A DNA stretch of 64,000 bases from Paramoeba atlantica. Taxonomy: Eukaryota; Protista; Discosea. The position numbers and the translations under genes are program-made. Below the pieces are notes generated by a model. The model worked only from the letters and a program-made list of their open reading frames with translations, was not told the origin of the DNA and did not search any database. Positions 3,001 through 46,712 of the stretch are shown one piece after another. Each line of letters begins with the position of its first letter. Within the stretch, counting starts at the first letter, position 1. The stretch covers positions 37,247 through 101,246 of the forward strand of contig CDRNVI010000189.1 in NCBI GenBank assembly GCA_977017575.1, read 5' to 3'.

Positions 3001-6000
3001 ATTTTTATGTGGTGGTTCACAAATCTCATCTTCAATCCAATCATTAAGAGAATCATCAGAATGAGATTCATCATCAAATTCTTCATCCTCATTGTGAATC
3101 AAATCTTTGAGTTTTGTCCCAAACTTTCTACTTTTGGTCTGTGAAAAAAATCAGATTGTCAGGAAATTGAAAATGTTTTATGGAATGGGCAATTGATAAA
3201 CTAAATGAAAAAGAGCCTATGACTTTTTTTTGAATAAACAATTAAGAAAAAATTGAATTATTTCGTAAAAAAAAGAAATCAAACACAAACCCGACTCTTT
3301 TTTGCAAGAAAACTGCTCAAAATATTCTGAAACTTCTGAATTAAATAAAAATAATCCAACGTTGTTGTTAAATCGTCACTCTCTACCGAATCCAACAAAG
3401 CCAATTTATATTTCGCCAAAAAATCGACCAATTCTGTTTTCCATGACGCATCAAGAAAAGATCTACAGAGAGGAACAAAAGAATAAGTAAACAAAAGATG
3501 TGACTTGAGAGAAAAAAGAAAAGAAAAAAAAGGGGGGGAAACCTGGGTCCTTCTTCTCCACCTTCCCAGACACCTCTTCCTGCTTCAACCAAATCCCTCC
3601 CAATGTGGACCACCTAAGTTTGTGATTCCATCAATTTCAAAAAAAAAAGGAGAGTTGAAGAGAAAAGAAGAGAAAAGAAAAGAAAAGAAAGAGAGAAAAA
3701 AAAACTAGATCCAAAAAAAAATAAATAAATAAATAAAAAACCTGTTCACAAAACCCATCAAACAACCCAAAACAATCCCTCAAAACCTCATTAACAACTG
3801 AATTATTGGCTTCACGAAACTCAGTCTTACAACAAAGCTTCATCAACAATCTGCCAATCAACTTTAATCCATTTCGACTCCCACTTTCTTCTTCAATTGA
3901 ATATGTTGCCACCATTGGAATAAAATATCGTAAAAAAATAACAGCACCAACAGCCCAATGTGACAACGGTGTCCGCTCAACCCTCTCAGCAACTGAATTT
4001 TGTCTCACAACTTCAACACATCGATAACAAATGACACAAAGTCCACGTGGCAAATTCTCTGCAGCCTCTAATAATTTACTCACAACTCTTTGTAGTGAAT
4101 TTTTTAGCTGTTTCGTTTTGGGTTCAATCTCATCAATCTCTCGATTTAAAATCAAGTCACATTTTGATTTTGTCAACTTCAATCCTAACTTCAAAAGCGG
4201 TTGTAACAAAGCCATTCCTGGTCCTCGAAATGGCTCCAACAAATGTTTCAACAAACACACGCTTGGGCTTGTTTCCCTCATCAACAACGCAACTTTTTTA
4301 TGTGACTCCAATTCGGAACGAAGCTCAACAAAAAAGAATCCTTCTGGATCACCATGAAGATCAAGTAATACGGCCATTAAAAAGGTCAATCGGAGCGGAG
4401 ACGCTGGAATTCCAATTAAGGTTACCAAGAAGGTCCGGGCCAATAAGTGGCTATGTGAACGGAGGATGAGAGAGAGTTGTACAACTTCTAAAACCCAAAA
4501 CGAATCAGTTTTGTTAAAAAAAAAAAAAAGTTGGAACAACTTTTCTTGCTGTTTTTTGAAGAGGTTTTTTGGTTTTTTGAAAAAAATCTTTCAAAAAATG
4601 GAAGAAAAAAAACCTTGTTTTTGAAGAGTTGAATTCGAAGTTCGTTGGCTTAACTTCACTTTTTTAATCCCAGAGGAAGAATTTGACCTTGCCCTGGTCA
4701 ACAAACCACTACTCAGCGTCTTTGAAGAAGAATACTTTGGCAAAGAAAGCTGTGGGCACTCTTTTCGAAAAGAATGTTTTAGATCTGAAATTCTTTCCAA
4801 CGCCACTTCCATTTCCTCGCTCTTCAAATCATCCAAACCCATGACGTATTTTCTCATCACATACCCATGAATAAGAAGAATCTTTCCAAAAGAAGTAACA
4901 GATTCTCGATCATCTCTCTCAGGAATTTGGCCTTCTGGTTCTTGGTAATGTTTCCCAAACTCCATAAAACATTCCATTTGAAGCTCCCGATTTTCTTCCT
5001 CCAACTCGCATAAACTAACTAAAAATAAATCAAGAAACTGATGACCTTCCGCGACACTTTGATTGGCAAACTTCATATTTTCTTCTTCAAAAGTTGTCCC
5101 ACTTGCTAAAGCTTCGACCATCTTCGCAACAAATTGAAGCAATCTCTTCATCGGCTGATTTGTTGCCAAATGAAGTTCGTCAGTTGAAGTGAGAGTTGGG
5201 CAAAGAAAGTCCAAAAAGAAGAAGCGAATGATTACTTTCTTAGCGAAAGTCTCTCCAAATTTCTTGGTCATCAAGACAGTCAGACAAGAACAAAAATTAA
5301 CTAATTGAGGGGGGAGAGTATCCACAGACCCAACAAGCATCTTTAAAAACAACCGAAAAGCACTCTCAATGCTTTGGCAAGTCGCAATCTGAACGCCCTC
5401 TTGCTCTCCAGCATGAATTAAATCTTTAATTTCGTTCAGTTGAGAGACTTGTGCATATAAAAACGACCCAACGATTGGTCGGAGATAACGAGTTCCGAAA
5501 AAATAGATGAACTTTTTGATGAAGAGAGACCCCGGTGAGTTTGGTAAGAAGAGGTTATCTTCTGTTTTGCACTCCACTTCATACTCCGATACAGCTTTTT
5601 TTTGCAACAAAAAAAGAAGGGGGAAAAAGGGGGGGAAAAGGTGAGAAAAGGTGTCAAAAAAAAAATTAAAATAATATTTCTAAACCTGTCACCCCAATGC
5701 TTGCGAGACCATACATGGAACAAACTCCATAAAAATAAGCAACAGTTTCATTTAGAGTTGAACCATGATCAATTTCGAAAAATGAGCGCATTGCGACAGG
5801 ACAAAGTAAGAAGAGATTCAAAGACTTTTCAAGAGAGGAAACAGCAGAAATTTCCGAATCAATGACCACGGCTGGTGGGAAACCAACCTAAAAAATAACA
5901 CACATAATTAAAAATAATCAGAAAAAAAAAGTTTTTCCACCCCCAAGAGAGAAACTAAAAAAATAAATCCTAAGAAAAAAGAAGAAACCTTATGAGGTTC

Positions 6001-19029: not shown

Positions 19030-22000
19030 ATGGAAGAAGAAAAGAGAAAGAAGAAAGTTGTGATTAAAGGAGAAGAAAAGAAGAAGAAGAGAGTTGTGGT
19101 TGGGATTGTTGGAGTGAAAGGGAGTGGGAAAAAGACTCTGTTGTACCAAACTTTGGCACGTTTTGGAGATCTCAATTCTTTTGGGATTCGTTGTCCATCA
19201 AAGTAATTTTATTTTTTTCATTTTTTTTTTCTTTAAAATTCTTTCCTCCTCTTTCTTCTTTCTTTTTTTTATTCTTATGAAATTTTGATCAACACAATTT
19301 TTCTCGATTCAGTGATGATCTCTTTTCAACTCTTTGGACAAACACTCGCAACTTAATAAGTGGAGCAAGAAAGGCAAGCCACCAAGGAAATGATGATCTT
19401 TGGAATACAATTAAAGATGTTGCTGATTTTAAAATTGGTTTTTCTTCAAAGAATATTGATCTTATTGCTCCTCTTTGGGAAAGAGTTATGACAAGTGTAT
19501 GTATTTTTTCTCTTCTTTCTTCTCTCCCCTCCCTCCTCTCTTTTTCTCTCTTCTTTTCTCTTTTTCTTTTTTATCCCTCTCTCAAATTTACACACCATCT
19601 CTCTTTTCTTTGATTCACACCCCTCATTCTTTTTCCTTTTCTCAAAAAAAAGGGAGACAAAACAAAAGAAGCCGTTTACAGATCATGTGTCGGATCACAA
19701 AGATTGTCTCCATCTTGGGAATCACTTGCCATTGCCATTCCTCGGATTGTTAAAGAAAAAGAAGCATTTGAAACAAAATTTGAAGAGTTGGTTCAGGCGA
19801 AAGTCGATTCTTTGAAGAGGATTCAGGCTGATTTGAGTTTGGAGGGGAGTGATTTTTCTTTTGTTGTTCCTGATTCTGCTCAGGTTTTTATTTGCTTTCT
19901 CATTTTCTTTTCTTTTTTTTTATATCTATTTTGATTAAGTTTATTAATCAATTTATTTATTAAAATAAGCAGAATGAGGAACTCGATCTTCGAATTTTCA
20001 CGGTTCCAATGAGCGATTTTAATGATACGTCATCTCCAAATCAAAATCTTCTCAAAGGTTTTTTTTTTTTAATAACAAGAAATTATTTGTTTTCCCACCC
20101 AAAAACAAAAGAGTAAAATTATTTTACCAAGAAACCCAACACAAGAACAATAATTGAAAATCCGAAAAATATCTTTCTGATAAGTCTCTCTCTTTCCCTC
20201 TCCCCAAAAAAAAACAACAGAATCATACCAATCTTGGCAGAAAACATCTTCACTTTCCCAAACCCCAACAATCCTCTTCTTCACAGGATACGATTTATTC
20301 AAAAAAAAGATCCAAAATGGAATACAATTAAAAGATTTTTTCACTGATTTTGAAGGTCCAAAAAATGATCCCCTAGAAGCTCTCCATTTCATAATCCAAA
20401 AATTCTCTTCTGCATCTTCTGTTGAATTATTAAAAAATGGACATGTCATTCTGTGTGTTGGATCAGCTCTTGACCCAACCTCCATCTCCAATTTCCAGCG
20501 TGTTTTGATTCCGTTTTGTCAAAGAAAATCGTTTCAAAATCTGCCACATGTTGCGTTTGATTTGACCCATCCTGAGATGGCTCTCTCTATTACCGATTCA
20601 AACCCTCCATCAAATGAAGTCCAACTACTTCAGAATCTCTTCTTTGAATCTTCTTCGAAAGATATCACCCTTACGGCCATTCCCAATTTCGAAACCGCTC
20701 AACTATCATTCAAACACCAGATGAAATGTGCAGATGGAGCTCTAAACTTTTTCTCAAACCCATTCGTGACGACAAAACGACTCGATTTAAAATATTTAAA
20801 ACGTGGTTCAATGGACGAAGCTACCTCAGCATGGAAAAAGATCAAACCTGAAAATTGTAATGAAGGAACAGTTGGTTTTCGTCACCCAACCATCACAAGT
20901 TTCTTTGGCGTCTCTTTAGACCCCCCAGCGTTCGTAATGGAATATATGGAGGGGGGAGATCTTTCTTCTTATTTGAATGAACCACTTGGTATTCTTGGTG
21001 ATTTGGTTCGTGTTCTTGAAACGTTGTGGCGTGCGGTCGGTGTTGTCACAATCCAGCGAGAAGTTGCGGAAAAGACTTTGAAATCTGTCCCACTGGATCT
21101 TAATTTGGAGACATTGTGTCATGGTTCATTTCAATTCGAAGCGATTCCAAAGTTTAAAAAGTGGAGAGAGATGTTGGATGTTTGTCCAAGAGCGGGGAAA
21201 AAAGAAAAAGGAGAGGTTGAATTGTTGGAAAATAGTGTCACGCGTGCTTTGAATGATTTTTTGAAAGATCCAAATGATAAAAGGAAGAATGAAACTGTGG
21301 GGGAGGTTATTAAGGATGTTTCAACTTTGGGAAGGAGACATGGATCTCTTGTTGGTTTGTTTTTGGATGTGTTTTTTTAATTTTTTTTTTTTGGTGGGTT
21401 TTTAGGGTTTTAATTAATTTTCTTGTTTTTTTGGTTTTTCAAAAAGAAAATACTTTCATTTTTCCAGAAGATTTATTAATCTTAAAATTAAAAACTCACT
21501 CATTTTGTGGAATAGGTGATGTGGATTGGAATATTCGATTAAAGATTGCTCTTGATGTTATTTCTGGAATTCTCCATCTTCTCTCTCGCTCTCCTTCAGT
21601 CCTTATGTCTGATTTGAGTGTATTCTTTTTCTTTCTTTGATTCTTTTTCTTTTTTTTCTTTTTGAAATTTTAATCATTCTTCATTATTTAGTCTTCAATG
21701 ATCTTATTGACAAAAGATCCGTTAAAGATCAAGATTGACGATCCTGAGTGGATTGTCGCGCCACTCGCAAAGGTTTCCTTTCATTTTCACTCTTTTTTTT
21801 TTTGGAATGAAAGAAATCTCTTTCTTTTAATACTTTTCGAATCTGATCCAATTTTTTTCATGATTTAGTTGGTGTATTTGGGACCATACCAAAAACTGAT
21901 TGAGGTTGGGAAGATGGAAGGTGAAGTGTCTTGGACTGCTCCTGAAGTTCTTCGTGGACATTCCCCAACTCTTCGCTCTGGTTTGTTTGGAAAATCTTTG

Positions 22001-24834
22001 TTAAGTTTTAAAAAATACACAGACTGAAGAGATTTTTTAATTATTTTGGAATTTGTTTAATTGGTCTTCATATGAATCAGCTCAATTGGTTGATACTCAC
22101 ATCCACTTTCTCTAGTTGTTTACACAGTAGGAATTCTTCTCTGGGAACTCTGGACATGTCAGCGCCCATACGACACCTTAATTCGAGAGAGTGGTGTTAC
22201 AGCTGAGGAAACCCAAAAATTCTTAAAATCATTTGTATTAGAAGGAGGACGACCGTCCTGGTTTTTTTCCCTTTTTTTTTATTTCCTGTTTCCTCTTTTC
22301 CCTTCTCTTCTCTTCCGCTCTCTTCCTTCTCTAACTATTGTTTCTTTTCCAAAAAGGCCACCAATTAGCACAGATCATGTTCGAACTTGTCCACCAGAAT
22401 ACCGAACACTTGTTGAAGCATGTTGGACAGAAAACTCTGGTCTGAGACCAAGATTTAAAGAGTTAATTCATGCTTTGTTACTTGTTTCTTCGAGTTTAGC
22501 GCCGAAATTACACTCTGAATTAATTAAACAACCTCACTTTGTTGATTATTGGGTTGCTGGAGAGGGAAGAGAGCCCAAAAACTCTGGTAAAGAATCGAAG
22601 GAATTAGAAGGAGAAAGATTTGTTGTTATTCCTTCCTCAAAGAAAGAGAGTGTGGCGGAGGAAGGTGACGGTCCTGAGATCAAAGCAGCACAAATTAGGT
22701 GGGTTTATTTGATGACAAATTTGGCCAAACAAATCTCTTCTGATGGGGGTCCTCTTGTGAAAGATTTGGAGTTTTCTCTTTCATATCTGACTTTGGGACA
22801 AGCGGTGCTTTTTCGGAAACGAATATCTGCAACTTTTGGAGTTCAAGTTTCGTCTGATAATATTTTACGGTCTGCAGGAGATGGTTTCACAATTGGAAAG
22901 TTTTTGGAAAGATATGTCCTTTCGCTGCGTTCGTTTCGAAGGTGGAGAAAGAAATTGAGACAACTTTTTGAAGAGTTGGACAATAGTGAAGAGTTGGTCA
23001 AAAATACTGACTTTTTTAATTTGAAATTGGAAGAATTGAATCTTCGGTCGAGTGAACTAATTGCTCTTCAAAATTTAATTGCGGATCGATTTGCTGTTAT
23101 GATCCCGTCTGGGAAAATGTTTCAAGTTGTCAAAGAGGGGAGAACACTTGAGGATTTTTTGGAACAACATCTTTTGCCACATCGAAACCGTCTCGAGCGT
23201 CGCAGCAACGTGGACGACAAGTTCCAAAATCGAGTTTTAAATCTCTTTGCATCTCTTGAGAATGGCGATCAACTAATCAAAATGACCGATTTTATGGATC
23301 TTTCTCTGTCGGAATTAGGGTTATCTTCTTTACAAATGGTTGGTTTACAAGACGCCATCTCAAAAGAATTTGGAGTTTTTGTACCATCTGGATTATTGTT
23401 TGAAGCTGTGGCAACTAATTTATCCATTTTCCAATTCTTTAAAAAATATGTGATTGCTTCTTGGAAGAGAGCTGTTGAAACAGAGAATCGTCAAAAGTCG
23501 TCACACTCTACTTCACCGAAATCTGGACGTGACGCCGAGGCCAGTCGACTCTCTCCTCTCAGCGAAGTTGATGCGCTTCAAATCCGAAACCTATTTGGAA
23601 AAATCGAAAAATGCAAAGAAATTTCCACCAAAGAAGATTTTTTACAAATCCTTCTTTTGGACATGAATATGAACTCAACAGATCTGGTTTACCTAAAAAA
23701 TACAATCTTTTTCGATTTTGGGGTCTATTTACCATCTGAGGTTATATTTCAATCTATGACCGAATCGATTACAATTGCGGATTTTTTTGTGAGACATGTT
23801 TTTGAGAAGTTGCCAAGAGAGAGAGGAGGGGAAGAGACGGGGAGGGCGAGAGGAGGAGGAGGGGTTGTTGTTACTGAGCAGGATAAGGCTGAGATTTTGA
23901 AGACTTTGATGACTTTGGGGTCTTTGAGACCGATTGGGTTTGGTGTTTTTTTTTATTATTATTATTTTATTAGTATTATTATTATTTTTTATTTTTTTTT
24001 TATTATTTTTTTTTTTCGTTTATTTATTTATTTATTTTATGTTTTTTTCTTCCTTCTTTTCTTACTGTTGATAATTTTATCATAATAAAAATAATTCTTT
24101 TCTCTTAAACAGAGAAAAAGAAGGATATGAAATGTTAAACATGTCGTTGGACTCATTTTATATGAACTCACTGGAATTAGTTGGATTTCAAAATGCAATT
24201 TCTGTCGCTTTTGGAGTCTTTGTTGCATCTGGCGCAGTATTTGATGGTTTTTTTCTCTCTCTTCTCTTCTTCTTCTCTCCTCTCTTCCTTTTTTAGAGTA
24301 TTTTTTTGATTAACTACTTCCTCTCTCTACCTCAATCTCTATCTTTTCTGTATTTATTGTAGGAGTCGCAAAACAAATGACAGTTATCGAATTTTTTGAA
24401 AAATATGTTTTTGAGGCAAGAGTGAAGAAATCAAAAAGAAAGAGAAAAGTACAGAAGACTCATCTCAAAGAAGAAGAAGAGAGAGTTTCTTATATAAAAA
24501 GAAATAAGAGAAGTAGCTCTTCTTCTTCTTCTTCTCTTATTTCTACCTCTGCTTCTGATCTTGGTCGAAGTGCTCACTCTTTTGCTTCTTTGAGTTCACT
24601 TGTACAAAAATCAAAAAAGAAAGAGAAAGACAAAGAGAAAGACAAAGAGAAAGACAAAGACAAAGACAAAGACGGAGAGATAAGGTTTCGGGTTGGGAGG
24701 AGTGATGGGTTTGCTTTGGAAAAGAAAGAAGAAGAAAGAAAGGAAGGAGAGGTAAGAGTAAGAAAGGGAAGTAATGCAGCTTTTTGGGTTTTTTTTCTTT
24801 TTTCATTTCCTTTCTGTTCTTTACTCCTTTCTCT

Positions 24835-24874
<40 letters not shown>

Positions 24875-27800
24875 CCAAACACTCACAAAACAACAATAAT
24901 AATAAATAAATAAATAATAGAAAAAACAAAACAAAAGACCACGCGCAAGTCTCGTTCTCCCAGGTGGCCAAATTCTTGGAGAAGAAGAAGAACTCGAAAA
25001 TATTGAGATTGAAGCTCTTGAAGATGAGAGAGAGAGAGGAGAGAGAGAGAGAGATTTTGTGAAAGAGCATGATCCTGATGTTCATTTGATTGATCCAAAG
25101 ATTTCTGTGGAGCTTGAAACGTTCTATTTGGAACGATATGGTTTATTTGGATTTTTTTCTTTTTTCTTTCTTTTTTCTTTCTTGTTTTTTATTATTATTT
25201 TTTATTATTATTATTTCCTTTTTATTATTATTTACTTTATTTATTATTATTAATGTTTCCTGATCTATTCTTCCATTCCCCCTTCCAAAAAACCCTCTCA
25301 TCTTCTTCTTCTCCCTCTCCAAAAGGCCTCCTCGGGCTCACCCCAGACGAAATAATGCAATCACCCTCCCTAGGCCAAGCACTCCTAACCCGTACATCAA
25401 GAAACCCAAACCAAACCATCCTCGTTTGGATTGGTACAAAAGGAAATGAAGAAGAAAGTATTACAATTGGGGAGTTGGTTCGAAATGCGAAGTTGATTTG
25501 GGATGAGATGAAGAAGAAAGGGATCAAGAAGGGGGATCATGTTGCTTTGTGTTTTGCGCCGTGTTTGTTGTTTGCTCAGGCGTTTTTTGCCTGTGTTTTT
25601 GCAGGTTTTTTTATTTTTTGTTACAATCTTTCTTTCTTTTTGTTTTTGAAAATTAAATTTTTTTTCCCTTTTTTAATCTTATTTTCTAACTTACAAATAA
25701 ACTAATTTTTTTAAATCTTTAAATTAAAAAAAAATACAAAATAGGAGTTGTATGTGTCCCAGTATACCCACCAGAACCATCCGCAGCGTTCACAGTCACA
25801 AGATTTATAAATATTTGTCGAGATGCCGAGTGTAAATTGATTCTTTCTCACTTTATGTGTACTTCTAGAATTGAAAAAGTTGTTGATTTGGGACTTGGGA
25901 CTACGGGAGGAGAGAAAGGAGAGAAAGGGGAGAAAGAGGAGAAAGGAGAGAAAGGAGAGAAAGGAGAGAAAGGGGAAGGAGAAGAAAAAGGAGAAAAGAA
26001 AAACAAAGGATCAAACGGATTAGATCAATTCCAATGGTTAAATACCGATTTTGTCAAAGAAAAAAGGGAAGAAAGTTTTGATTTTGATTTTGAAATTGAG
26101 TCACAAAATCATGATTCGCTTTGTTTTTTGCAATTTACGAGTGGGTCCACTGGCTTTCCAAAAGGGGTTATGGTTCGCCATTTGGGGATTTTGTTGGAGT
26201 GTGTCTATTTGCCACCAGCTCGTTGTCACGCGCTTTGGCTTCCTCATGTTCATGATCTTGGTATGGCTCTAAATTTTTTGTTTATTTTATTTTATTGATT
26301 TTTCTTTTCTTTTCTTTTATTTTGTAAAAAAAAGGTGTTTAATTTTTTTTTTTCATAAATAGGGTTGCTTTGTTTAATTCAGGGGGTATTAATGAGCCAT
26401 AGAACATACTTAATGAGTCCTGTGACGTTTGTTCGAGCTCCTCCACTTTGGGTTTTTTTGTCAAGTGAAATTCGAGCGAATCAAATGATTGGTCCTAATT
26501 TTGCATTTGAGTTGTGTGCATTGAAGTTTCCACGTGAGGTTTGTTGTTGGATATCAGAATTATTATTTTTCTTTCTTTTCAGTCTAGAACTTTTTTGAAA
26601 AATTGTTCTCTTTTTTTTTATTCAATTTAATTCTAAAAATTAAACACTCGTTACAACAGGGACTAGACAAAATTGACCTCTCATCAATCCAATACGTCAC
26701 AAACGGAGGCGAACCAATGAAAAAAACAACAATCGATTTATTCACCAAAACATTCAGAAATTGTGGATTCATCGAAACAGGATTTGTAAATGGGATTGGG
26801 ATTGCTGAATTTACTCTTGCTTTGACATATCAACAAGCCACATACACTGAAATTATTATTGATGTTGCAGAATATAAGAAGAATGTTGTTGTTCCTGTTG
26901 GTAGTGGTGGTGGTTCTGGGGGTTCTGGGGGGGCGTTGAATTGTCTTTCTTTGATTGGTGCCACTCTTCATCCTGGTATTTTTTTATTATTTATTTTTAT
27001 TTATTTTTATTGATATTTATTTATTTTTATTTTTTTAAATTTTTATTATTGAATTTTATTTAAAAATTTTATTCAAATTTTTGACAACAAAATCTCTTCT
27101 GATTTTCCCCCTTCTCTTTCTTCTCTCTCTCCCTTCCAGATGTGACATCCGCAGTAGTCGATCCCGAAACAAAACAACGAGTCCAATCAGAACACCATAT
27201 CGGAGAAATATGGCTCCAAGGACCGACAATGACAAAAGGATATTATTTACAAGAACAAAAAACGGAAGAGACTTTTCGAGCCAAGATTTTGGGGGAAGAA
27301 GAGAGGGGTTGTTGGTTGAGGACTGGTGATTTGGGGTTTGTTATTGGGAGGAAGATTTATCTTTCTGGCAGATATAAGGTTTTTTTTGTTTTTTTGTTTT
27401 TGTTTTGTTTTTTTTGTTTTGTTTTTTTTTCTTTTTTGTTTGTTTTTTTTTTCTTTATTTTGATTATTTTATCTCTCTCTTCCTTATCTCTTCATAAAAA
27501 TAATTCTTTTCTTTTTCGTAGGATGTAATCATATTAAAAGGACAAAATTTCCACGCTGTAGATATTGAAGAAGTTACAAGAGCAGCTTCACCAGCCATTC
27601 GTCCTGGTTGTGTCTCTGCCTTTCATTTTACTCATAAAAGTTTTGATTGTGTTGGGATTGTTGCGGAGGTTTGTCTCTTCTTTCTCTCTCTCTTTCTTTT
27701 TTCTCTTTCTAAATTTTTTTTTGATTATTTTTTATTGCTTGTTCTCATTTTTGTCTGTGATAGGTGAAAAATGATCAAGCAGACGAAGCAGAATTAGAAC

Positions 27801-28033
27801 TTATTTGTCAGACAATCCAAACGGCATTGGCAACAAACATGGGAATCATTGTAAATCTCATTGTTTTAATTAAATGTCGCAGTATCCCTAAGACAACGAG
27901 TGGGAAATTGCAAAGAAGTTTGGCAAAGAAAATGTATTTTGAAAAGAAATTAAAGATTTTGTTTGAGAGGGAGTTGTATGATGAGGAAGAGGAAGATGAT
28001 GAAGATGATGAAGATGAGGAAGAAGAGGAATAA
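19030..28033 (+). CDS. Large multi-exon fusion: degenerate G-alpha-like domain, TKL pseudokinase, 5 ACP-like repeats, fatty acyl-AMP ligase
   Basis: GVKGSGKKT P-loop; ILFFTGYDLFKKKI; HPTITSFFGV..VMEYMEGGDL; WTAPEVL; GILLWEL; repeats such as ELGLSSLQMVGLQDAISKEFGV; LQFTSGSTGFPKGV; GPNFAFEL; GEIWLQG; LRTGDLG; IPKTTSGKLQR. Phase-compatible GT-AG introns were found at the junctions checked, including TGG|gt ~24788 to ag|AAA 24920. That this is a single transcript is inferred. Confidence 0.72.
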
Positions 28034-28145
28034 AAAAGAAAGGAATAGAAAAGTTTTTGGTTTCAAGACTGTAAAGTGAAATTATTATTTTTATTTTTAT
28101 TTTTTTGATTTTGAAATCTTAAGAGAGAGGGAGAAAGGAAAAAAA

Positions 28146-28222
28146 GAATAAAATTTTCACATCAACAAAATATCTCCAAAAATATTTCAGTTTTGATATT
28201 CTGTCTCATCATCTTCTCATTT
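28146..28222 (-). promoter_or_regulatory. SECIS element (type II), deiodinase copy 1
   Basis: Minus strand reads ATGA GACAGAATATC AAAA CTGAAA TAT TTTTGG A GATATTTTGTT GAT: AUGA/GA core, 11-bp helix II, AAAA bulge and apical mini-stem. Identical to the copy 2 element. Confidence 0.88.
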
Positions 28223-28347
28223 TCCAATTCTCCCTTTCAATCTCTTTTTCTCTTTTTCAATCAAACAAAAAAAGATCTTCTCTCTCTTTTCTCTTCTCTT
28301 CTTTCTTCTCTCTTCTTCTTTAATCTTCAATATTGTTTTCTTCTTTG

Positions 28348-29022
28348 TTAATTCTTTTTGAAATCTTTGATCCATTGTTTAAGAGAAGAAAGAGAATAAT
28401 GAAAAGGACCAACACCACCAACATAAACAATCTTACGATCTAAAACAACATACAATCGTTCAGGAAGAGCAGAAAACATCAAATCAACTCGGTTGTCCAT
28501 CAAATCAACAACCAATGGCCCTTCAACTTGATACTTTTCTTGAAATTCAAACGCAAGTTTCACTCTTTCTTCCATTGTTCGAGGTTGACAAAACGTAATC
28601 TCTGAATGGACATGCCATTCATCAATTGGATGAGCTTCTGAAATGTAAATGGTCACAAAATCAATCGATTTTTCAAATTCAATCACCAAGTTCCCAAAAT
28701 TTGCGATCTTGGCTGCGAATGGACCTCAGCTCATCGATCCGAAATTCAACACAAGAGGTCGATCTTTCTTCCCAAAAGTTTCAAATAATCTCACGTTTTG
28801 TTTTGATTTTGGGTCATACACTTCGATATCTTCTTCTCCAATTTCCATTCCAACACTCCAAGGGAACTGGTTTCTCGCTTCCAAGTTCAGAAGAAACCCT
28901 TTCATCTTCTCTTGATCCGTTTCGACTCGTTTGTCATTCTCTCGGCGGGGACAGGTCACTGATGGGTGATCTGCTTCGCAATAGAGGCATTGGCCTCCAC
29001 AATCGAGGTCTGGTAAACTCAT
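28348..29022 (-). CDS. DIO: Iodothyronine deiodinase-like selenoprotein, copy 1 (224 aa, Sec at codon 99)
   Basis: ORFs 28726..29022 and 28348..28689 are in one frame, separated only by TGA at 28726-28728. Reads RPLVLNFGSMS-U-GPF, then IYISEAHPIDEW, VDLMDN, ALPERLYVV and YVGGVGPFHY (DIO hallmarks). SECIS downstream. Confidence 0.92.
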
Positions 29023-29319
29023 TTCTCCCCTTTCTCAAGAAGAGGAAGAGAGAGGAAGAGAGAGGGGAGCAAACTGAAAACAGAAAACAAAAAATTGTTC
29101 TCACTACGAATCGAAATGGGGTATTTTCATTTTTATTATTTATTATTATTGTGCGAAAATAAAATATTAATTTTTTTTGAAAACCTGATAAAAAATCGAC
29201 TTGTTTTTGTGTTTTTTGTGGAGAGGAAAAAGAGTGCGAAGAGACAAGAAAAAAAGAAGAAAATAGCTTGAGAGATAAGAGATTCATTTCCTTCAGTTCA
29301 CTCATACAATCACGACCAC

Positions 29320-31721: not shown

Positions 31722-32305
31722 TTCTCTCTTTTTACTCTTTTATGTTTTGTACTCAGAAAAGAAAGGAAGATCAACTCCAGAACAAACTCGAAAAACAAAG
31801 TGGTAACGAAAAAAGAGGCTAGACTAAAACAAAGAAAGAATCCCAATGACAATCCCATCCACAAAACAAGTCGAAAAAAAAAGAAAAAACCAAAAAAGAA
31901 AAAACCAAAAAAGAGAGAGACGAAAAGAGGAAAGAGAAAACACGTGTTGGCTTTCCCCCAAAAATGAAACGGGATTTCAATGAAACGAAACACGATTTTC
32001 TTAGGTGAAAGAATTAGGGAAATAACTCTCACTCTTGTCTTATTTTCATTTCTTTTCTTCTCTTTTTCTCCTTTTTTTCTTCTATCTTCTTCACTCCTTT
32101 TTTCTTGCAACAAAAAAACGCAAAAAACAAGTCGATTTTTTTCGGGTATTCAAAAAAAAATTAATATTTTATTTTCACACAACAACAATAAATAATGAAA
32201 ATGAAAATACCCCATTTCGATTCGTAGTGAGAACAATTTTCTGTTTTCGGTTTGGCTCTTTTCCTCTCTCTTCCTCTCTCTTCCTCTTCTTGAGAAAGGG
32301 GAGAA

Positions 32306-32980
32306 ATGAGTTTACCAGACCTCGATTGTGGAGGCCAATGCCTCTATTGCGAAGCAGATCACCCATCAGTGACCTGTCCCCGCCGAGAGAATGACAAACG
32401 AGTCGAAACGGATCAAGAGAAGATGACTGAACACTTGAAGCTGGTCCAGTCTCGAAACCAGTTCCCTTGGAGTGTTGGAATGGAAATTGGAGAAGAAGAT
32501 ATCGAAGTGTATGACCCAAAATCAAAACAAAACGTGAGATTGTTTGAAACTTTTGGGAAGAAAGATCGACCTCTTGTGTTGAATTTCGGATCGATGAGCT
32601 GAGGTCCATTCGCAGCCAAGATCGCAAACTTTGGGAACTTGGTGATTGAATTTGAAAAATCGATTGATTTTGTGACCATTTACATTTCAGAAGCTCATCC
32701 AATCGATGAATGGCATGTCCATTCAGAGATTACGTTTTGTCAACCTCGAACAATGGAAGAAAGAGTGAAACTTGCGTTTGAATTTCAAGAAAAGTATCAA
32801 GTTGAAGGGCCATTGGTTGTTGATTTGATGGACAATCGAGTTGATTTGATGTTTTCTGCTCTTCCTGAACGATTGTATGTTGTTTTGGATCGTAAGATTG
32901 TTTATGTTGGTGGTGTTGGTCCTTTTCATTATTCTCTTTCTTCTCTTAAACAATGGATCAAAGATTTCAAAAAGAATTAA
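32306..32980 (+). CDS. DIO: Iodothyronine deiodinase-like selenoprotein, copy 2 (224 aa, Sec at codon 99)
   Basis: ORFs 32306..32602 and 32639..32980 are in one frame (offset 333 nt) with TGA at 32600-32602 in NFGSMS-U-GPF. Same DIO motifs as copy 1; SECIS downstream. Confidence 0.92.
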
Positions 32981-33150
32981 CAAAGAAGAAAACAATATTG
33001 AAGACTAAAGAAGAGAAAGAGAAGAGAGAAGAGAAGAGAAAAGAGAGAGAAGATAGAAGAAAGAGGAAAGAAGAGAGAAGATCTTTTTTTGTTTGATTGA
33101 AAAAGAGAAAAAGAGATTGAAAGGGAGTTCAGAGGAAGAGAGAATTGGAA

Positions 33151-33227
33151 AATGAGAAGATGATGAGACAGAATATCAAAACTGAAATATTTTTGGAGAT
33201 ATTTTGTTGATGTGAAAATTTTATTCT
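33151..33227 (+). promoter_or_regulatory. SECIS element (type II), deiodinase copy 2
   Basis: ATGA at 33163-33166. GACAGAATATC (33167-33177) pairs with GATATTTTGTT (33198-33208), followed by GA at 33209-33210. AAAA at 33178-33181. Mini-stem CTGAAA/TTTTGG. Helix I AATGAGA/TTTTATT. Confidence 0.9.
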
Positions 33228-33810
33228 TTTTTTCCTTTCTCCCTCTCTCTTTTCGAGACTCCAAAACTGGCATTTCCAAAATCAAAATAATAATTTCACT
33301 TTACAATCTTGAAACCAAAAACTGTTCTATTCCTTTCTTTTTTATTCCTCTTCTTCCTCATCTTCATCATCTTCACTCATCAGACAACTCCCTCTCAAAC
33401 AAAATCTTCAATTTCATCGAGATCTTCAACTTCGCGAGATTCTTTTCGATAATTTAAAAAAAAAACGATCACAAATCGAAAAACGCGTTCTTTTCTCTAT
33501 CCTTTTTCGAGTTGTGACACAAGGGGTCACAAAGACAGGAAGAAAACTCCAAAAAGAAATGGAACATTCTCAAACCAACCAGAAATTTCATTCCTTTGGA
33601 TAAGAGATCTCGATGGCCGCAAAATCGAGAAAAGAGAACAGAAAATTCGGGAATAAAAAGACCCAAAAAAAAGGGAACAGAAAAGAAAACCATTTCCAAA
33701 AATCCTTTTTCTGTTTTTCTCCAAAGCAGAAATTTTTAAATTTTTGCGGTTTTTATTTTTTGGTTTCGTTTCTTGCGCACAATTTTTCTTTTCTTTTGTG
33801 GTGGTCGAGG

Positions 33811-36212
33811 ATGTTATTTCGATTGGTTTTGGTCTTTCTTTTCTGCGCTCGTTGGTCTGTGGGAGAGCGACAATATTGCCATCCTGGTGAAGATTGCTGG
33901 CCTTCATCTGATGAAGTCCAAAAACTTGTGAATTCTCTTGATCCATCCGCTCCTCGTTTTTACTACTGGCAAGGTATCTTTCCTCTTTGAACGATTCTTT
34001 TTTGGATGACGCAACTTCAAACAAAACTTGAGAGATGAGAGAGAGAGAGAGAGAGAGAGAGATTGAAGAGAGAGATTGAAGAGAGAAAAAGAGGGGTTGT
34101 GTTGGTTGGTGTTGATTAGGGTTGGTTTTGAATGAATACTTATTTTTTTTCTCTCTCTTTTTCATCAGGTCCAGGATATCGACGTGTTGGTCCAACTCCA
34201 ATTTTCAGCCCTAATCACCAACCACTCTTTGGACTTGGAGAACAATCAATGGATCCTCTTTATCAACCATCTGGTGATGATTTCAATACTCCTTGTTTTG
34301 CTCCCACTCCATCATCACCACCACGACTTTCCAAGGATTCCCCTTCTCTCCCATTTGGATCTTCTTCTTCTTCTTTCTCTCCATCTTCTTCTTCTTCTCT
34401 TTATGATGAGATGGATTTGAGTTCTGAAATATCAGGATTTTATGGTTCAGATTATTGTCGTGCATCAACTCGAAACAATCCATTGAATGGATCTGTTCCA
34501 GCGTTTGTTGTTTGGCCTCTCACCGTTCAACATATTCAAACATTAATCCAGTTTGCAAATGATCATGATCTTTGTGTTTCAGTTGCTGGTTTCTTTTTTC
34601 TTTTTTCTTTCTTCTCTTTTCTTTTCTTTTCTTCTCTTTTCTTGTAAAATTGAATTCTCAAAAAAGAAATAAATTAAAAATGACAAAAAAAAATAGGAAC
34701 TGGACATGACTACCTGAACAGACACAGTTGTGAAGATTCTCTTTTCATTCGAATGGGACTTTTTAAAGATATTGAATGGGTTGATGGTGATCAAAACCAC
34801 TTGCGAATTGGTCCTGGAAACGTGTTTGATGAACTTCAAGCTTTTGCTATCACTCGTAATCGTTATATTGCGAGTGGTTGGGTTAAGTTTTGTGTCTTTC
34901 ATTTTTACATTTTATTTTCGATTTATTTTCGATTTATTTTCGATTTATTTTCAATTTATTTCTCTTTTATTTCTCTTTTCTTTTTTTCTTTTGGGTTTTT
35001 TTTTTTCTTTTGGGTTTTTTTCTCAAATTTTTCTTCCAATATCAGCACTGTTGGGATTGTGGGTTGGAGTATTGGAGGAGGACATGGTCCTTTTGCTCCT
35101 TCTGCTGGTCTTGGTGTTGATAATGTTGTTGAGGTTTCTTTTTTATCTTCTCTCTCTCAAATCTCTCTTACCTACCACCACTCCCCCTCTCACCCTCTCC
35201 TCTCTTCTTTTTTTTTGTTTTTGTGAGGTTTCTTAAAAACGATAATGATTGATTGTTTTTGAAAAAGGTGGAAATGATCACCGCTGCTGGTGATGTTCTT
35301 GTTGCAAACTCCCAACAAAATACTGATGTGTACTGGGCACTTCGTGGTGGAGGAGGATCAACTTGGGGAATTATCACATCAATCACAGTTCGAACTCACG
35401 AAAACCCTGCAGAAGGTGTCACAACATCTGCTTCAGTGTGGAGTGGGACCTTTTGTGAACGAGGACCAAACAATTTGGGTTTCTTTGAAAAACTGATTAC
35501 TGAGTACATTCAATGGACCCTTGATAAAGACACACGTTGGGGAGGATATGCGTACTTCATTACTCGAAAAAGCGATTCTACTGCATCATGTGGAGTGAAT
35601 TGGTTTAGTTGGATCAACTATGTTTTCCAAGGAGCTGAGACTGATCCTGAATTTCAATACGCTTTGAATAATTTGAGTGCTATTGGTGGAATTCATGAAA
35701 CCAATACCTCTCATTGGGACAGCTGGGCCCAGAGACTTGAAATCGAAAGAGTCGACCCAATCTATCCTGTTGAAGCTTGGCCAATTATTCCTGGAGATAC
35801 TGTTGGTGGGATTCCTTCAACGACTGTAACTCGTGAATTTGCAACAAATGGAACTCTCGCTGAATATGTGATTGGTCAGGTGATGCAATGTAAAACAACA
35901 GGAAGATGTGGGTTTCAGCAGTTGTATCAAGATATCACTGGAAATATTGGATCTCAACAACCACAAAATGTCTCAATTTCAGAGGGAATGAGATCTGATC
36001 TTTTTCATTATGCTCTCGATTTTACAACAACCCAAAAGCAACTTCAGGAGGCTTTGCGTTTGGGTCGTGGTGCTTATTTTAGTGAAAGTGCGCTCGAAAT
36101 GCCCAACTATGAGGAAGTCTATTGGGGTGAGAAGAATTACAAGACTTTGAGGGAGATCAAAAAGAAAATTGACCCAACTCAACGTTTTTGGTGTCGCCAT
36201 TGCGTTCAATAA
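33811..36212 (+). CDS. Secreted FAD-linked oxidoreductase (PCMH FAD-binding plus BBE domain), copy 1 (multi-exon)
   Basis: Signal peptide; CHPGEDCWPS; VA|GTGHDYLNR (covalent-FAD His motif); TVGIVGWSIGGGHG; WALRGGGGSTWGI; GAYFSE..YWG..Y..L..IKKKIDP. Confidence 0.9.
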
Positions 36213-44855: not shown

Positions 44856-46418
44856 TTAGTTGATGGGTTCATACTCATCACGCTCTTTTTTCTTTTGGTA
44901 AGCGACATAACCAACTCCAAGAAGAACCAGGATCGCAAGAAGAGCTCCAATTGTGATAGCAATGATCGCCCATGTTTTCAATCCGTTGTTTGGACTCTTG
45001 GGAGATGGCGGAGGACTTGGTGATGGTGGTGGGCTTGGGCTTGGTGATGGGGTGGGGATTGGTGTGGGAGGAGGGGAAGGTGAAGGAGGAGGGGAAGGAG
45101 AGGGGAAAGAAGAAGGGCTTGGCATTGGGGGTGTAGAAGGGAAAGGAGAAGGAGTAATGGAAGGTGAAGGAGTAGTGGATGGAGAAGGGGACGTGGAAGG
45201 AGAAGGAGAAGAACCCGTGGAAGGGGAAGGAGACATGGATGGAGAAGGAGATGCAGAAGGAGAAGGAGAAGAACCTGTGGAGGGAGAAGGGGACGCGGAA
45301 GGTGAAGGAGACGCAGAAGGAGAAGGAGAAGAACCTGTGGAAGGGGAAGGAGACATGGATGGAGAAGGAGATGCAGAAGGAGAAGGAGAAGAACCCGTGG
45401 AAGGGGAAGGAGACGCGGAAGGTGAAGGAGACGTGGAAGGAGAAGGAGAAGAACCTGTGGAGGGAGAAGGGGACGCGGAAGGAGAAGGAGACGTGGAAGG
45501 AGAGGGAGAACCTGTGGAGGGAGAAGGGGACGCGGAAGGTGAAGGAGACGCGGAAGGAGAAGGAGAAGAACCTGTGGAGGGAGAAGGGGACGCGGAAGGA
45601 GAAGGAGAAGAACCTGTGGAAGGGGAAGGAGACGCGGAGGGAGAAGGGGACGCGGAAGGAGAGGGAGAAGAACCTGTGGAAGGAGAAGGGGAAGCAGAAG
45701 GGGAAGGGGTAGTGGAAGGGGAAGGAGAAGCGGAAGGGGAAGCAGAAGGAGAAGGAGATGTAGAAGGAGAAGGAGATGTAGAAGGAGAAGTGGAAGGAGA
45801 AGGGGCAGCAGAAGGAGAAGGAGATGTAGAAGGAGAAGGAGAAGCGGAAGGAGAAGGGACTGTGGAAGGAGCTGGAGAAGGACTGGGTGCAGTAGGAGTC
45901 GGAGTAGGAGTTGGGGTTCGAGTAGGAGTTGGAGAGGGAGAGGGAGAGTTGGGTGGCTCAATTGAACATCCTGGACCAAGAATTGGGTTGTTCGTTTCTG
46001 GGGGGTATCGATAAGTCTTACCACTTGATGGATCTGTCCATTCATAGTAACTCTGAAAATTCTTATAGTCACTAGAATTCCATTTTGCATCTTTGATCTC
46101 TGCTGTGACTGGCATCTCAATGACACTCACAGATCCAGCAGAATATTGACACCCTGTTTGGCCATTCTGGTGATTTATATGCTCACAAGTATTTCCTTGA
46201 TTGCAACCACAAGTTACAGTTCCTCCAAGATCTGGACAAACATAAAAAAAGAGAGGGGTAAAAGTTGAGGGATTGGCACCATCTTGGACAAGCGAGTATC
46301 TCACATCGCTTCCATCACCTTTGATATCGTCGACTGTCGATTGGATATGAACAAATTCGTTCGTTTGTGACTGGACAAGAATAACGAAGAGGGAGAACAA
46401 GACGAACGAACGAAACAT
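44856..46418 (-). CDS. Type I membrane protein: signal peptide, Cys-containing N-domain, Ser/Pro stalk, TM helix, short tail
   Basis: 520-aa ORF; ~330 aa of SPSPS(A/T/M) repeats; [27 protein letters not shown]; tail ends YEPIN. Confidence 0.9.
45000..45950. repeat. Coding tandem repeat ([14 protein letters not shown]-type units)
   Basis: Imperfect ggagaagg-based tandem units inside the 44856..46418 CDS. Confidence 0.9.
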
Positions 46419-46712
46419 CTTCTTTCGAAAAGGCGTGTTAATTCCTTCAGAAAGATTGATTTGAACTTGAATTTCTCTTTGAGGCTCAGATTGAAACTCA
46501 AAAAGAATTCACAAAAACTTTTTGCGAGAAAAAAAAAGGCAGAAACCTATCCAAAAGGGGTTTGGCGCTTTTGCATTTTTTCTTTTTCTGATTTACCGTT
46601 TTTTTGATCATCTTTTTTATTCAAAGAAAAATAAAAAGACTCAAGGACTTTCGACCCTCTTTTCACGTTTGGTTGCTTTTGTTGCAGATTTATTGATTCT
46701 CTCAAACAATGC

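What the first reader, a model, noticed from the sequence alone, without database searches (positions are those of the whole stretch)
19030..28033. Apparent G-alpha-like / pseudokinase / ACP x5 / fatty acyl-AMP ligase fusion protein
Seen: one strand with no intervening stop once phase-compatible GT-AG introns are removed, carrying four modules that do not normally occur together. Known: FAALs activate fatty acids and load them on ACP phosphopantetheine for PKS/NRPS, and G-alpha and TKL domains are signalling modules. Inference: a signalling scaffold wired to acyl activation and loading, for example a lipid sensor or a regulated acyl-ACP factory. No KS, condensation, thioesterase or reductase domain is in the window, so the acyl acceptor is unexplained. 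I do not recognise this architecture from any described family.
Basis: partly seen in the sequence, partly recalled or inferred. Interest (0 to 1): 0.9.

Follow-up and report, generated by a model that had tools for sequence, protein, structure and literature searches.

The report
Dead G-alpha/kinase fused to ACPs and FAAL
A marine amoeba-type genome seems to encode one 2,190-residue protein joining an inactive G-protein-like domain, an inactive kinase, five acyl-carrier domains and an intact fatty-acid-activating enzyme; no such combination was found in the databases and papers searched, but the last joint rests on sequence analysis only, not on RNA.

Summary

Profile searches support all four modules:
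- **G-alpha:** only the C-terminal third is recognisable, and its GTP-binding motifs are degenerate.
- **Kinase:** TKL-type and catalytically dead (HRD is MSD, DFG is YLG).
- **Carriers:** five ACP-like repeats, four with the serine at the pantetheine position. One was modelled as an ACP fold.
- **FAAL:** complete, with adenylation motifs A3, A7, A8 and A10 canonical and A5 nearly so.

The G-alpha/kinase and kinase/ACP joints each lie inside a single exon, so they need no splicing. Only ACP5-to-FAAL depends on predicted splicing, through a 73-codon exon (24921-25140). That exon has no start codon but clear codon bias (0 of about 10,000 wrong-frame windows reach its score).

I put a single gene at about 0.8.

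Apart from a second copy of this locus, only one protein among 1.84 billion representatives has this odd ACP type: a paralogue in the same organism with a dead adenylation domain, an ACP, a ketosynthase and three such ACPs. It is a candidate acyl acceptor. Function is inferred. This is a new variant of FAAL-ACP loading systems.

The parts
19030..28033 (+). Whole predicted gene: 20 exons, 19 GT-AG introns, 2,187 aa (2,199 aa with donor 24788). Exons: 19030-19202, 19313-19496, 19653-19883, 19973-20057, 20221-21354, 21468-21619, 21692-21772, 21869-21980, 22116-22260, 22357-23937, 24113-24246, 24363-24751, 24921-25140, 25326-25604, 25745-26260, 26363-26538, 26660-26975, 27140-27378, 27522-27668, 27764-28033.
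   Evidence: Assembled and translated without a stop. Every exon has a positive codon score in frame. A second assembly, L001, is 99.8% identical; all indels fall in predicted introns and the two exonic SNPs are synonymous.
19030..20540 (+). Degenerate G-alpha-like domain (about aa 1-330, exons 1-5). The P-loop at 19102-19140 has Lys where the Mg-binding Ser should be. No DxxGQ motif is present. NKxD reads TGYD. There is no N-terminal Met-Gly lipidation site.
   Evidence: PF00503 G-alpha, 49.4-50.9 bits (cut-off 48.8), on 20221-20441 only, profile positions 236-306 of 333. PDB 6ne6 Galpha7, E = 1.8e-5. Exons 1-3 give only generic P-loop hits or none. Motif states were read from the model protein.
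20745..22504 (+). TKL-type pseudokinase (about aa 400-815, exons 5-10) with an insert of about 120 aa after the hinge. The catalytic loop HRDLKxxN reads MSDLSSSM (MSD at 21605-21613). DFG reads YLG (21875-21883). APE is kept.
   Evidence: PK_Tyr_Ser-Thr fragments, profile 58-96 and 226-258. blastp E = 1e-20 over 198 aa to TKL kinase domains of P0004, spanning the spliced exons. Alignment of the catalytic residues.
22697..24421 (+). Five tandem ACP-like repeats, 23-32% identical to each other: R1 22697-22945, R2 22946-23185, R3 23213-23467, R4 23561-23812, R5 23873-24421 (crosses introns 10 and 11). The Ser at the phosphopantetheine position is kept in R2-R5 and lost in R1. The preceding Asp is replaced in all five.
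   Evidence: PP-binding, 29-33 bits on R3. A profile of the repeats hits almost only carrier proteins in the PDB, weakly (E = 0.03-1). Alignment with canonical ACPs puts the Ser in register. AlphaFold model of R3 has pLDDT 90.5, and the 50 best Foldseek matches listed are nearly all acyl or peptidyl carrier proteins or carrier-containing complexes. R5 is restored in frame by splicing.
24422..24751 (+). Low-complexity linker (Ser run, Lys/Glu/Asp repeats) at the end of exon 12. The exon ends at 24751, or at 24787 with the alternative donor.
   Evidence: Model protein.
24752..24920 (+). Predicted intron 12. The donor is GTAAGA at 24752 or GTTTTT at 24788; both are in frame. The acceptor at 24920 is A-rich and weak. 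The intron contains a (CT)n run and three overlapping AATAAA at 24901-24914.
   Evidence: PWM scan. A 2-bp length difference at 24843 between the two assemblies. AATAAA count. Non-coding codon score.
24921..25140 (+). Exon 13, the bridge between ACP5 and the FAAL. It has 73 codons, no in-frame ATG, and a TAG immediately upstream.
   Evidence: Codon score +0.183 bits per codon in frame (other frames -0.34 and -0.93), and +0.307 over the last 29 codons. 0 of 5,000 dinucleotide shuffles, 0 of 1,333 non-coding windows and 0 of 9,840 wrong-frame 219-nt windows reach the observed value.
25141..25325 (+). Predicted intron 13: T/C-rich (78% pyrimidine), with its acceptor at the first AG after the tract. 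It contains the in-frame ATG at 25253 that a separate FAAL gene could use.
   Evidence: The acceptor at 25325 is the best in 24600-25400 (10.6). The donor at 25141 scores 9.0. A 1-bp indel and 3 SNPs separate the two assemblies. The alternative N-terminus 25253-25325 scores -0.006.
25326..28033 (+). Complete fatty acyl-AMP ligase (aa 1541-2187, exons 14-20). Motifs: A3 TSGSTGFPKG (26137-26166), A5 IGIAE, A7 LRTGD, A8 GRYKD, A10 PKTTSGK (27887-27907). It ends in an acidic tail. A Gly/Glu/Lys low-complexity insert lies in exon 15.
   Evidence: The seven exons match adenylating-enzyme profiles in colinear order, and six of them match FAAL families (PRK09192, PRK05850, PRK12476, FadD32). Rough summed scores are about 150-173 bits for FAAL families against about 82 for the best acyl-CoA ligase family. 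Pfam AMP-binding and AMP-dom_DIP2-like. Motif search.

Best explanation
One nuclear gene of an intron-rich, AT-rich protist encodes a soluble protein of about 2,190 residues. Other agents' notes call the organism a marine amoebozoan.

From N to C the protein holds a G-alpha-derived pseudo-GTPase, a TKL-derived pseudokinase, five tandem ACP-type carrier domains, a disordered linker of about 190 residues, and a catalytically intact FAAL.

Proposed mechanism:
1. The FAAL adenylates a fatty acid.
2. Like other FAALs, which do not use CoA, it transfers the acyl group to the phosphopantetheine arm of its own carrier domains. The long linker lets it reach them in cis.
3. The acyl-ACPs are handed to a partner in trans. 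The best candidate is the paralogous protein of the same organism: dead adenylation domain, ACP, ketosynthase, and three ACP-like repeats of the same unusual type.
4. The dead G-alpha and kinase domains act as docking or regulatory scaffold, not as enzymes.

Shown here: the open spliced frame, the domain identities, the loss of catalytic residues in the G-alpha and kinase parts, and the retention of motifs in the FAAL. Inferred: splicing of exons 12-13-14, pantetheinylation, cis loading, the trans partner, and the scaffold role.
For: - Gene model without a stop.
- The G-alpha C-terminus and the kinase N-lobe share exon 5. The kinase C-end and ACP1-4 share exon 10. These joints therefore need no splicing.
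- Exon 13 looks coding, has no start codon, and is phase-compatible on both sides.
- All 13 indels between the two assemblies lie in predicted introns, and both exonic SNPs are synonymous.
- FAAL motifs are intact and FAAL families are the best matches.
- ACP fold, PP-binding hit and conserved Ser.
- Pseudokinase alignment.
- The same odd ACP type occurs with an adenylation-like domain and a KS in a second gene of the same assembly.
Against:
- The acceptor at 24920 is weak (2.7).
- Intron 12 holds three AATAAA after a CT-rich stretch. This resembles the one 3' UTR of this species examined, from the L005 gene.
- An in-frame ATG at 25253, and another at 25356 just before the FAAL core, could start a separate FAAL gene.
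- All five carrier repeats lack the Asp of the DSL motif, and R1 lacks the Ser.
- No orthologue with this architecture was found, so conservation cannot be used.
Confidence: 0.55

Rival explanations
1. Two adjacent genes. A G-alpha-like / pseudokinase / ACP x5 gene ends by read-through into the CT-rich stretch (stop at 24911) and is polyadenylated at the AATAAA cluster. A separate stand-alone FAAL gene starts at ATG 25253 or 25356. Exon 13 would then be untranslated leader.
For: - Three AATAAA at 24901-24914, and AATAAA also follows the real 3' ends nearby.
- A CT-rich stretch followed by AATAAA resembles the 3' UTR of the L005 gene.
- The acceptor at 24920 scores only 2.7.
- The spacing of 340-445 nt equals the 372 nt between the REV1-like gene and this gene.
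- The Met at 25356 sits where FAAL profiles begin.
- No transcript was seen.
Against: - Exon 13 has strong frame-specific codon bias, is stop-free, and has no ATG.
- The read-through tail 24752-24910 and the alternative N-terminus 25253-25325 score as non-coding.
- A 2-bp length difference at 24843 would shift that tail's frame.
- Both flanking introns are phase-compatible, and 25325 is the best acceptor of the region.
Confidence: 0.17
2. One gene, but the five ACP-like repeats are pseudo-carriers: never pantetheinylated, acting as helical spacers or interaction modules. The protein would then be a FAAL carrying three kinds of dead domain. It would load a free-standing ACP or another nucleophile, or act like the DIP2 FAAL-like domains on lipids directly.
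For: - The Asp of the DSL motif is replaced in all repeats (RS, SS, NS), and R1 has no Ser.
- Only R3 passes the Pfam threshold.
- The carriers sit upstream of the FAAL, which is the reverse of usual loading modules.
- The two other N-terminal modules are demonstrably degenerate.
- The paralogue shows that dead catalytic domains are tolerated in this protein family.
Against: - The Ser is kept in register in 4 of 5 repeats here and in all 3 repeats of the paralogue, despite only 23-32% identity between repeats.
- The ACP fold is predicted with confidence.
- The same repeats accompany a KS that keeps its Cys and His residues.
Confidence: 0.22
3. Decaying pseudogene or assembly chimera with no functional product.
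For: Many catalytic motifs are lost in the N-terminal half. No homologue of the whole protein was found. Almost nothing of the stretch was found in the one probable RNA run of the species (share 0.02).
Against: - A 6.6-kb frame stays open across 19 introns.
- Codon bias is present in every exon.
- Two assemblies differ by 30 changes, yet none is an exonic indel or a non-synonymous change.
- The FAAL motifs are intact.
Confidence: 0.04

Closest known systems
Bacterial FAAL-ACP loading modules (for example mycosubtilin synthase MycA, or FadD32 with the N-terminal ACP of Pks13)
   Same: A FAAL-type adenylation domain sits in the same system as phosphopantetheine carrier domains. The best PDB match of the repeat profile is the MycA loading region, 6kfu. 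The FAAL exons match FadD32 and FAAL families best.
   Different: The carriers lie upstream of the FAAL and number five. There is no KS, C, TE or R domain in the protein or in the ORFs scanned in the window. The gene is eukaryotic and intron-rich, and is fused to G-alpha-like and kinase-like domains.
Tandem-ACP arrays of PUFA synthases and protist type I PKS
   Same: Several ACP domains in a row on one polypeptide. Canonical tandem-ACP proteins (P0006, P0010) are among the few distant hits.
   Different: No KS, AT, KR or DH domain in cis. The repeats are far more divergent (23-32% identity) and lack the conserved LGxDS motif.
DIP2 (DMAP1-binding domain plus two FAAL-like domains), a eukaryotic regulator of diacylglycerol species linked to PKC signalling (PMC9342972, PMC12055004, PMC8460268)
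   Same: A eukaryotic FAAL-type domain used outside PKS/NRPS pathways and tied to signalling. The C-terminal exon hits Pfam AMP-dom_DIP2-like.
   Different: There is a single FAAL of the bacterial type with canonical motifs, no DMAP1-binding domain, and carrier domains are present.
Roco/LRRK-type proteins of amoebae (Roc GTPase - COR - TKL kinase)
   Same: A G domain and a TKL-family kinase domain on one polypeptide. The nearest kinase relatives found include a Ras/Roc-plus-kinase protein, P0004.
   Different: The G domain is of the G-alpha type, not Roc. There is no COR domain. Both domains lack catalytic residues.
Paralogue in the same assembly (L005 6307-12733): degenerate adenylation domain - ACP - KS - three ACP-like repeats
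   Same: Apart from a second copy of this locus, it is the only protein among 1.84 billion representatives with the same unusual ACP-like repeat. It is also coupled to an adenylation-type domain. It comes from the same species.
   Different: It has a KS and no G-alpha or kinase part. Its adenylation domain has lost the A3 P-loop and the A10 lysine, whereas the FAAL studied here keeps them.

Membership tests
Fatty acyl-AMP ligase (FAAL, ANL superfamily) | Adenylation core motifs A3, A5, A7, A8 and the A10 lysine | tested here: met
   TSGSTGFPKG, IGIAE, LRTGD, GRYKD and PKTTSGK are all present in order. A5 has Ile where Tyr or Phe is usual.
Fatty acyl-AMP ligase (FAAL, ANL superfamily) | Closer to FAAL than to acyl-CoA ligase profiles, including the segment that holds the FAAL-specific insertion | tested here: met
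   Six of the seven exons hit FAAL families, colinearly. Rough summed scores are about 150-173 bits against about 82 for the best CoA-ligase family. About 55 residues fill the gap between profile positions 346 and 397 of PRK09192. The scores are per exon, so no curated full-length cut-off can be applied.
Fatty acyl-AMP ligase (FAAL, ANL superfamily) | Rejects CoA and transfers the acyl group to holo-ACP | not testable with these tools
   Needs an enzyme assay.
Acyl carrier protein / PP-binding domain | Profile match and four-helix carrier fold | tested here: met
   PF00550, 29-33 bits against a cut-off of 20.8, for R3. The model has pLDDT 90.5, and the 50 best Foldseek matches listed are nearly all carrier proteins or carrier-containing complexes. 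The alignment used for the model included canonical ACPs, which favours this fold.
Acyl carrier protein / PP-binding domain | Conserved Ser of the (D/N)S(L/I) motif at the start of helix II | tested here: inconclusive
   The Ser is in register in R2-R5 and absent in R1. The preceding residue is R, S, N and N, never D.
Acyl carrier protein / PP-binding domain | Phosphopantetheinylation | not testable with these tools
   Needs a PPTase assay or mass spectrometry.
Heterotrimeric G-protein alpha subunit | Pfam G-alpha profile above the gathering score | tested here: met
   49.4-50.9 bits against 48.8, but only profile positions 236-306 of 333. PDB 6ne6, E = 1.8e-5.
Heterotrimeric G-protein alpha subunit | Intact G1-G5 nucleotide-binding motifs | tested here: not met
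   In G1, Lys replaces the Mg-binding Ser. No DxxGQ motif is present. NKxD reads TGYD. These were read from the model protein and the alignment to Galpha7. I conclude a pseudo-GTPase, not a working G-alpha.
Heterotrimeric G-protein alpha subunit | Helical domain inserted between G1 and G2 | tested here: inconclusive
   About 200 residues separate the P-loop from the TGYD position, as in G-alpha and unlike Ras. Exons 2-3 give no G-alpha hit.
Protein kinase, TKL group | Kinase fold | tested here: met
   blastp E = 1e-20 over 198 aa to TKL domains. Pfam fragments match both ends of the domain.
Protein kinase, TKL group | Catalytic residues: HRD Asp with the loop Asn, and the DFG Asp | tested here: not met
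   HRDLKxxN reads MSDLSSSM, so the Asn is lost. DFG reads YLG, so the Asp is lost. It is a pseudokinase.
Type I PKS / PUFA synthase | Ketosynthase and acyltransferase in the same protein | tested here: not met
   Neither domain was found in the gene or in the ORFs of 170 aa or more that I scanned.

The most novel reading that the evidence does not exclude
The protein is a fatty-acid-state sensor. The cis FAAL charges the tandem carrier domains according to fatty-acid supply. The acylated arms then bind the dead kinase or dead G-alpha domain (or release them), switching a signalling scaffold. This would be comparable to acyl-ACP reporting lipid status to LYR proteins in mitochondria. It would be a new way of coupling lipid metabolism to signalling through pseudoenzymes.
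Probability: 0.1. Interest if true: 0.85.

Novelty: new variant of a known kind. Interest (0 to 1): 0.6.

Why it matters
FAALs are known as entry gates for fatty acids into polyketide and lipopeptide lines, and in DIP2 as regulators of signalling lipids. Here an apparently active FAAL and a carrier array are welded to two pseudoenzymes of signalling origin.

If this is one protein, it is a natural case of assembly-line chemistry recruited to a signalling-type scaffold. It also comes paired with a paralogue that has the opposite pattern, a dead adenylation domain with its ketosynthase catalytic residues retained. That pairing suggests a division of labour that can be tested directly.

It also adds to the sparse record of FAALs in protists. 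Those reported so far are fused to PKS or NRPS modules or have no described partner domains (PMC12820801, PMC8460268).

Tried and rejected
- **Read evidence.** These lie inside intron 6. Only local scripts read the whole window, and they masked that stretch in print.
- **Transcripts in the JGI collection.** Scans with exon 13 and exon 14 found nothing relevant: only two GC-rich bacterial contigs, L003 and L004.
- **Orthologues.** The representative search with exon 10 found only the locus's own ORF from a second assembly, the paralogue, canonical tandem ACPs and kinases. Word-index searches with exons 10, 15 and 5 returned only the locus's own ORFs or nothing.
- **Atlas searches.** They gave generic kinase and ACP clusters.
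- **G-alpha in exons 1-3.** No hit.
- **Literature.** No paper among the 3-4-term searches describes this domain combination.
- **Composition argument dropped.** I first took the pyrimidine-rich composition of 24752-24920 as evidence for an intron. I withdrew this after seeing that a 3' UTR of the same species is equally pyrimidine-rich.
- **Rejected model.** Exon 13 reading through to the stop at 25251, with the FAAL starting at 25253. This would leave no room for a promoter.
- **Not attempted.** I did not submit the spliced protein to remote tools, because it has no reference and would have had to be typed.

Full report
**Setting.** The window is AT-rich (about 35% G+C) eukaryotic DNA with many short introns that are pyrimidine-rich on the coding strand. 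Notes by other agents call the genome a marine amoebozoan, named Paramoeba atlantica in one note, with a kinetoplastid endosymbiont. I did not verify this.

A second assembly of the same locus exists: ENA ERZ24900291, contig ctg3963l, fetched as L001. It is 99.8% identical to the window.

**Observation.** From the stop-free segments of the + strand I built a model of 20 exons and 19 GT-AG introns of 72-185 nt. It runs from ATG 19030 to the stop at 28031-28033 and translates to 2,187 residues without a stop.
- A codon-usage log-odds model trained on 21 other ORFs of the window gives every exon a positive score in the predicted frame and negative scores in the other two frames. Introns and the flanking intergenic DNA score negative or near zero, at most +0.12.
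- Between the two assemblies, all 13 indels in the gene lie in predicted introns. The only two exonic differences are synonymous.

**Which joints depend on splicing.** Exon 5 (20221-21354) alone carries both the G-alpha match and the kinase N-lobe. Exon 10 (22357-23937) alone carries the kinase C-end and ACP repeats 1-4. Those two fusions are therefore direct readings of uninterrupted frames.

Splicing of exons 6-10 is supported by a colinear blastp alignment to TKL kinases, E = 1e-20 over 198 residues. Splicing of introns 10 and 11 restores the fifth ACP repeat in register.

Only the ACP5-to-FAAL link rests on prediction alone. The path is exon 12, intron 12 (24752 or 24788 to 24920), exon 13 (24921-25140), intron 13 (25141-25325), exon 14.

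**The critical joint: evidence for one gene.**
- Exon 13 is 73 codons long, preceded by a TAG, with no in-frame ATG.
- It scores +0.183 bits per codon in frame, against -0.34 and -0.93 in the other frames. Its last 29 codons score +0.307.
- Three null sets fail to match it. None of 5,000 dinucleotide shuffles, none of 1,333 non-coding windows and none of 9,840 wrong-frame or antisense 219-nt windows of the same gene reaches the observed score. For the 87-nt window, 0.05% of wrong-frame windows do.
- A coding exon without a start codon must be spliced to an upstream coding exon. Both candidate donors of exon 12 are phase-compatible with 24921.
- Downstream, the donor at 25141 scores 9.0. The acceptor at 25325 scores 10.6, is the best in the region, is the first AG after the pyrimidine tract, and matches the phase.
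- The alternative C-terminal tail (24752-24910) and the alternative N-terminus (25253-25325) score as non-coding.
- Length differences of 2 bp and 1 bp between the assemblies fall in these stretches.

**The critical joint: evidence against.**
- The acceptor at 24920 is weak (2.7).
- Intron 12 ends in three overlapping AATAAA after a CT-rich run. That is also what a 3' UTR of this species looks like.
- The Met at 25356 sits where FAAL profiles begin.
- The spacing would fit a normal intergenic gap of this genome.

The only probable RNA run of the species holds 2% of the sampled words. Both scans of the JGI collection were saturated.

I put one gene at about 0.8. A short isoform ending at the AATAAA cluster is a further possibility.

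**G-alpha-like domain.** Pfam G-alpha reaches 49.4-50.9 bits, just above the cut-off of 48.8, and covers only profile positions 236-306. The best solved structure is Galpha7, 6ne6. Exons 1-3 give only generic P-loop matches or nothing. The P-loop has Lys at the Mg-binding Ser position, no DxxGQ motif is present, and NKxD reads TGYD. I read this as a pseudo-GTPase of G-alpha origin.

**Kinase domain.** The alignment to TKL domains shows HRDLKxxN replaced by MSDLSSSM and DFG replaced by YLG, with APE kept. It is a pseudokinase.

**Carrier domains.** There are five repeats of about 85 residues, 23-32% identical to each other.
- R3 passes the PP-binding threshold.
- The repeat profile hits almost only carrier proteins in the PDB, though weakly.
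- Aligned with canonical tandem ACPs, the Ser of the GLDSL motif is in register in R2-R5 but absent in R1. The preceding Asp is always replaced.
- An AlphaFold model of R3 has pLDDT 90.5. The 50 best Foldseek matches listed are nearly all carrier proteins or carrier-containing complexes, with probability up to 0.99 and TM about 0.6. The input alignment contained canonical ACPs, which favours that outcome.

**FAAL.** The seven exons match adenylating-enzyme profiles in colinear order, and six of them match FAAL families. Motifs A3, A5, A7, A8 and A10 are present; A5 has Ile where Tyr or Phe is usual. The segment that holds the FAAL-specific insertion has the length expected for a FAAL.

**Relatives and context.** Against 1.84 billion representative proteins, exon 10 found only four kinds of hit: its own ORF from the second assembly, one protein with the same odd ACP type (P0002), canonical tandem ACPs, and kinases matching the kinase tail.

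P0002 is a contig from a JGI sample, which I take to be a transcriptome; its origin as RNA was not checked. Its 90%-identity cluster mate, P0014, lies on the same ENA assembly as L001 (contig ctg3944l, fetched as L005). The JGI contig matches it at 99.4%.

That locus (L005 6307-12733) reads as follows:
- an adenylation domain that has lost the A3 P-loop and the A10 lysine;
- a PP-binding domain;
- a ketosynthase that keeps its Cys and the HGSGT motif;
- three ACP-like repeats of the same type;
- a Lys/Glu tail.

So the organism has two proteins sharing this carrier type. One has an intact FAAL and no KS. The other has a KS whose catalytic residues are retained and a dead adenylation domain. 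This gives a concrete, testable candidate for the missing acyl acceptor.

In the window itself, the ORFs of 170 aa or more that I scanned (about 30 of 34) carry no KS, condensation, thioesterase or reductase domain. The neighbours are a REV1-like gene, a kinase, two BBE-like oxidases, RasGAP genes, an LRR protein and deiodinase-like genes.

**Comparison and novelty.** The chemistry should work like a bacterial FAAL-ACP loading module, and the array resembles PUFA-synthase tandem ACPs. It is not a member of either system, because KS and AT are absent.

It shares with DIP2 the use of a FAAL-type domain outside PKS/NRPS pathways in a signalling context (PMC8460268, PMC9342972, PMC12055004). It shares with Roco proteins the pairing of a G domain with a TKL kinase.

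A recent survey of FAALs reports eukaryotic FAALs fused to PKS or NRPS modules, plus others whose architecture is not described. It mentions no fusion to kinase or G-protein domains (PMC12820801). My term searches found no paper describing this combination.

I rate it a new variant of a known kind. Interest is moderate to high. It is limited by the missing RNA proof, by the lack of orthologues, and by the frequency of odd fusions in protist genomes.

Noticed in passing
L005:6307-12733 (ENA ERZ24900291 ctg3944l, same species): Paralogous gene with few introns. It carries an adenylation domain with the A3 P-loop and A10 lysine lost, a PP-binding domain, a ketosynthase (Cys and HGSGT kept), three ACP-like repeats of the same unusual type, and a Lys/Glu tail. 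The JGI contig L002 covers its 3' part at 99.4% identity.
   Followed up: partly
window 24897-24920: An (AATA)n run gives three overlapping AATAAA at the 3' end of predicted intron 12, just after a variable (CT)n run. It may be a polyadenylation site producing an isoform without the FAAL.
   Followed up: partly
window 27995-29263 and 32064-33381: Inverted duplication of about 1.3 kb at 91% identity. Each copy carries a deiodinase-like (T4_deiodinase) gene immediately downstream of the FAAL gene.
   Followed up: no
window 44859-46508: G+C-rich (0.57), strongly G- and A-skewed stretch with long overlapping ORFs on both strands. It looks like a low-complexity repeat rather than ordinary coding DNA.
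   Followed up: no
window 35253-36209 (+) and 46716-47669 (-): Two ORFs of 318-319 aa, each with a berberine-bridge-enzyme C-terminal motif at the same position. They look like paralogous FAD oxidases.
   Followed up: no
window 3640-5610 (-) and 62189-63490 (+): Several RasGAP-domain ORFs at both ends of the window.
   Followed up: no
L005:1-3353: The end of a called product of 3,332 residues with many subtilisin (Peptidase_S8) and P_proprotein domains, followed by a LanC-like gene.
   Followed up: no
It is T-rich low-complexity sequence inside predicted intron 6 (21620-21691).
   Followed up: no
P0003, P0004: The nearest relatives of the kinase C-end are proteins with six and three tandem TKL kinase domains. 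P0004 also has a Ras/Roc domain.
   Followed up: no
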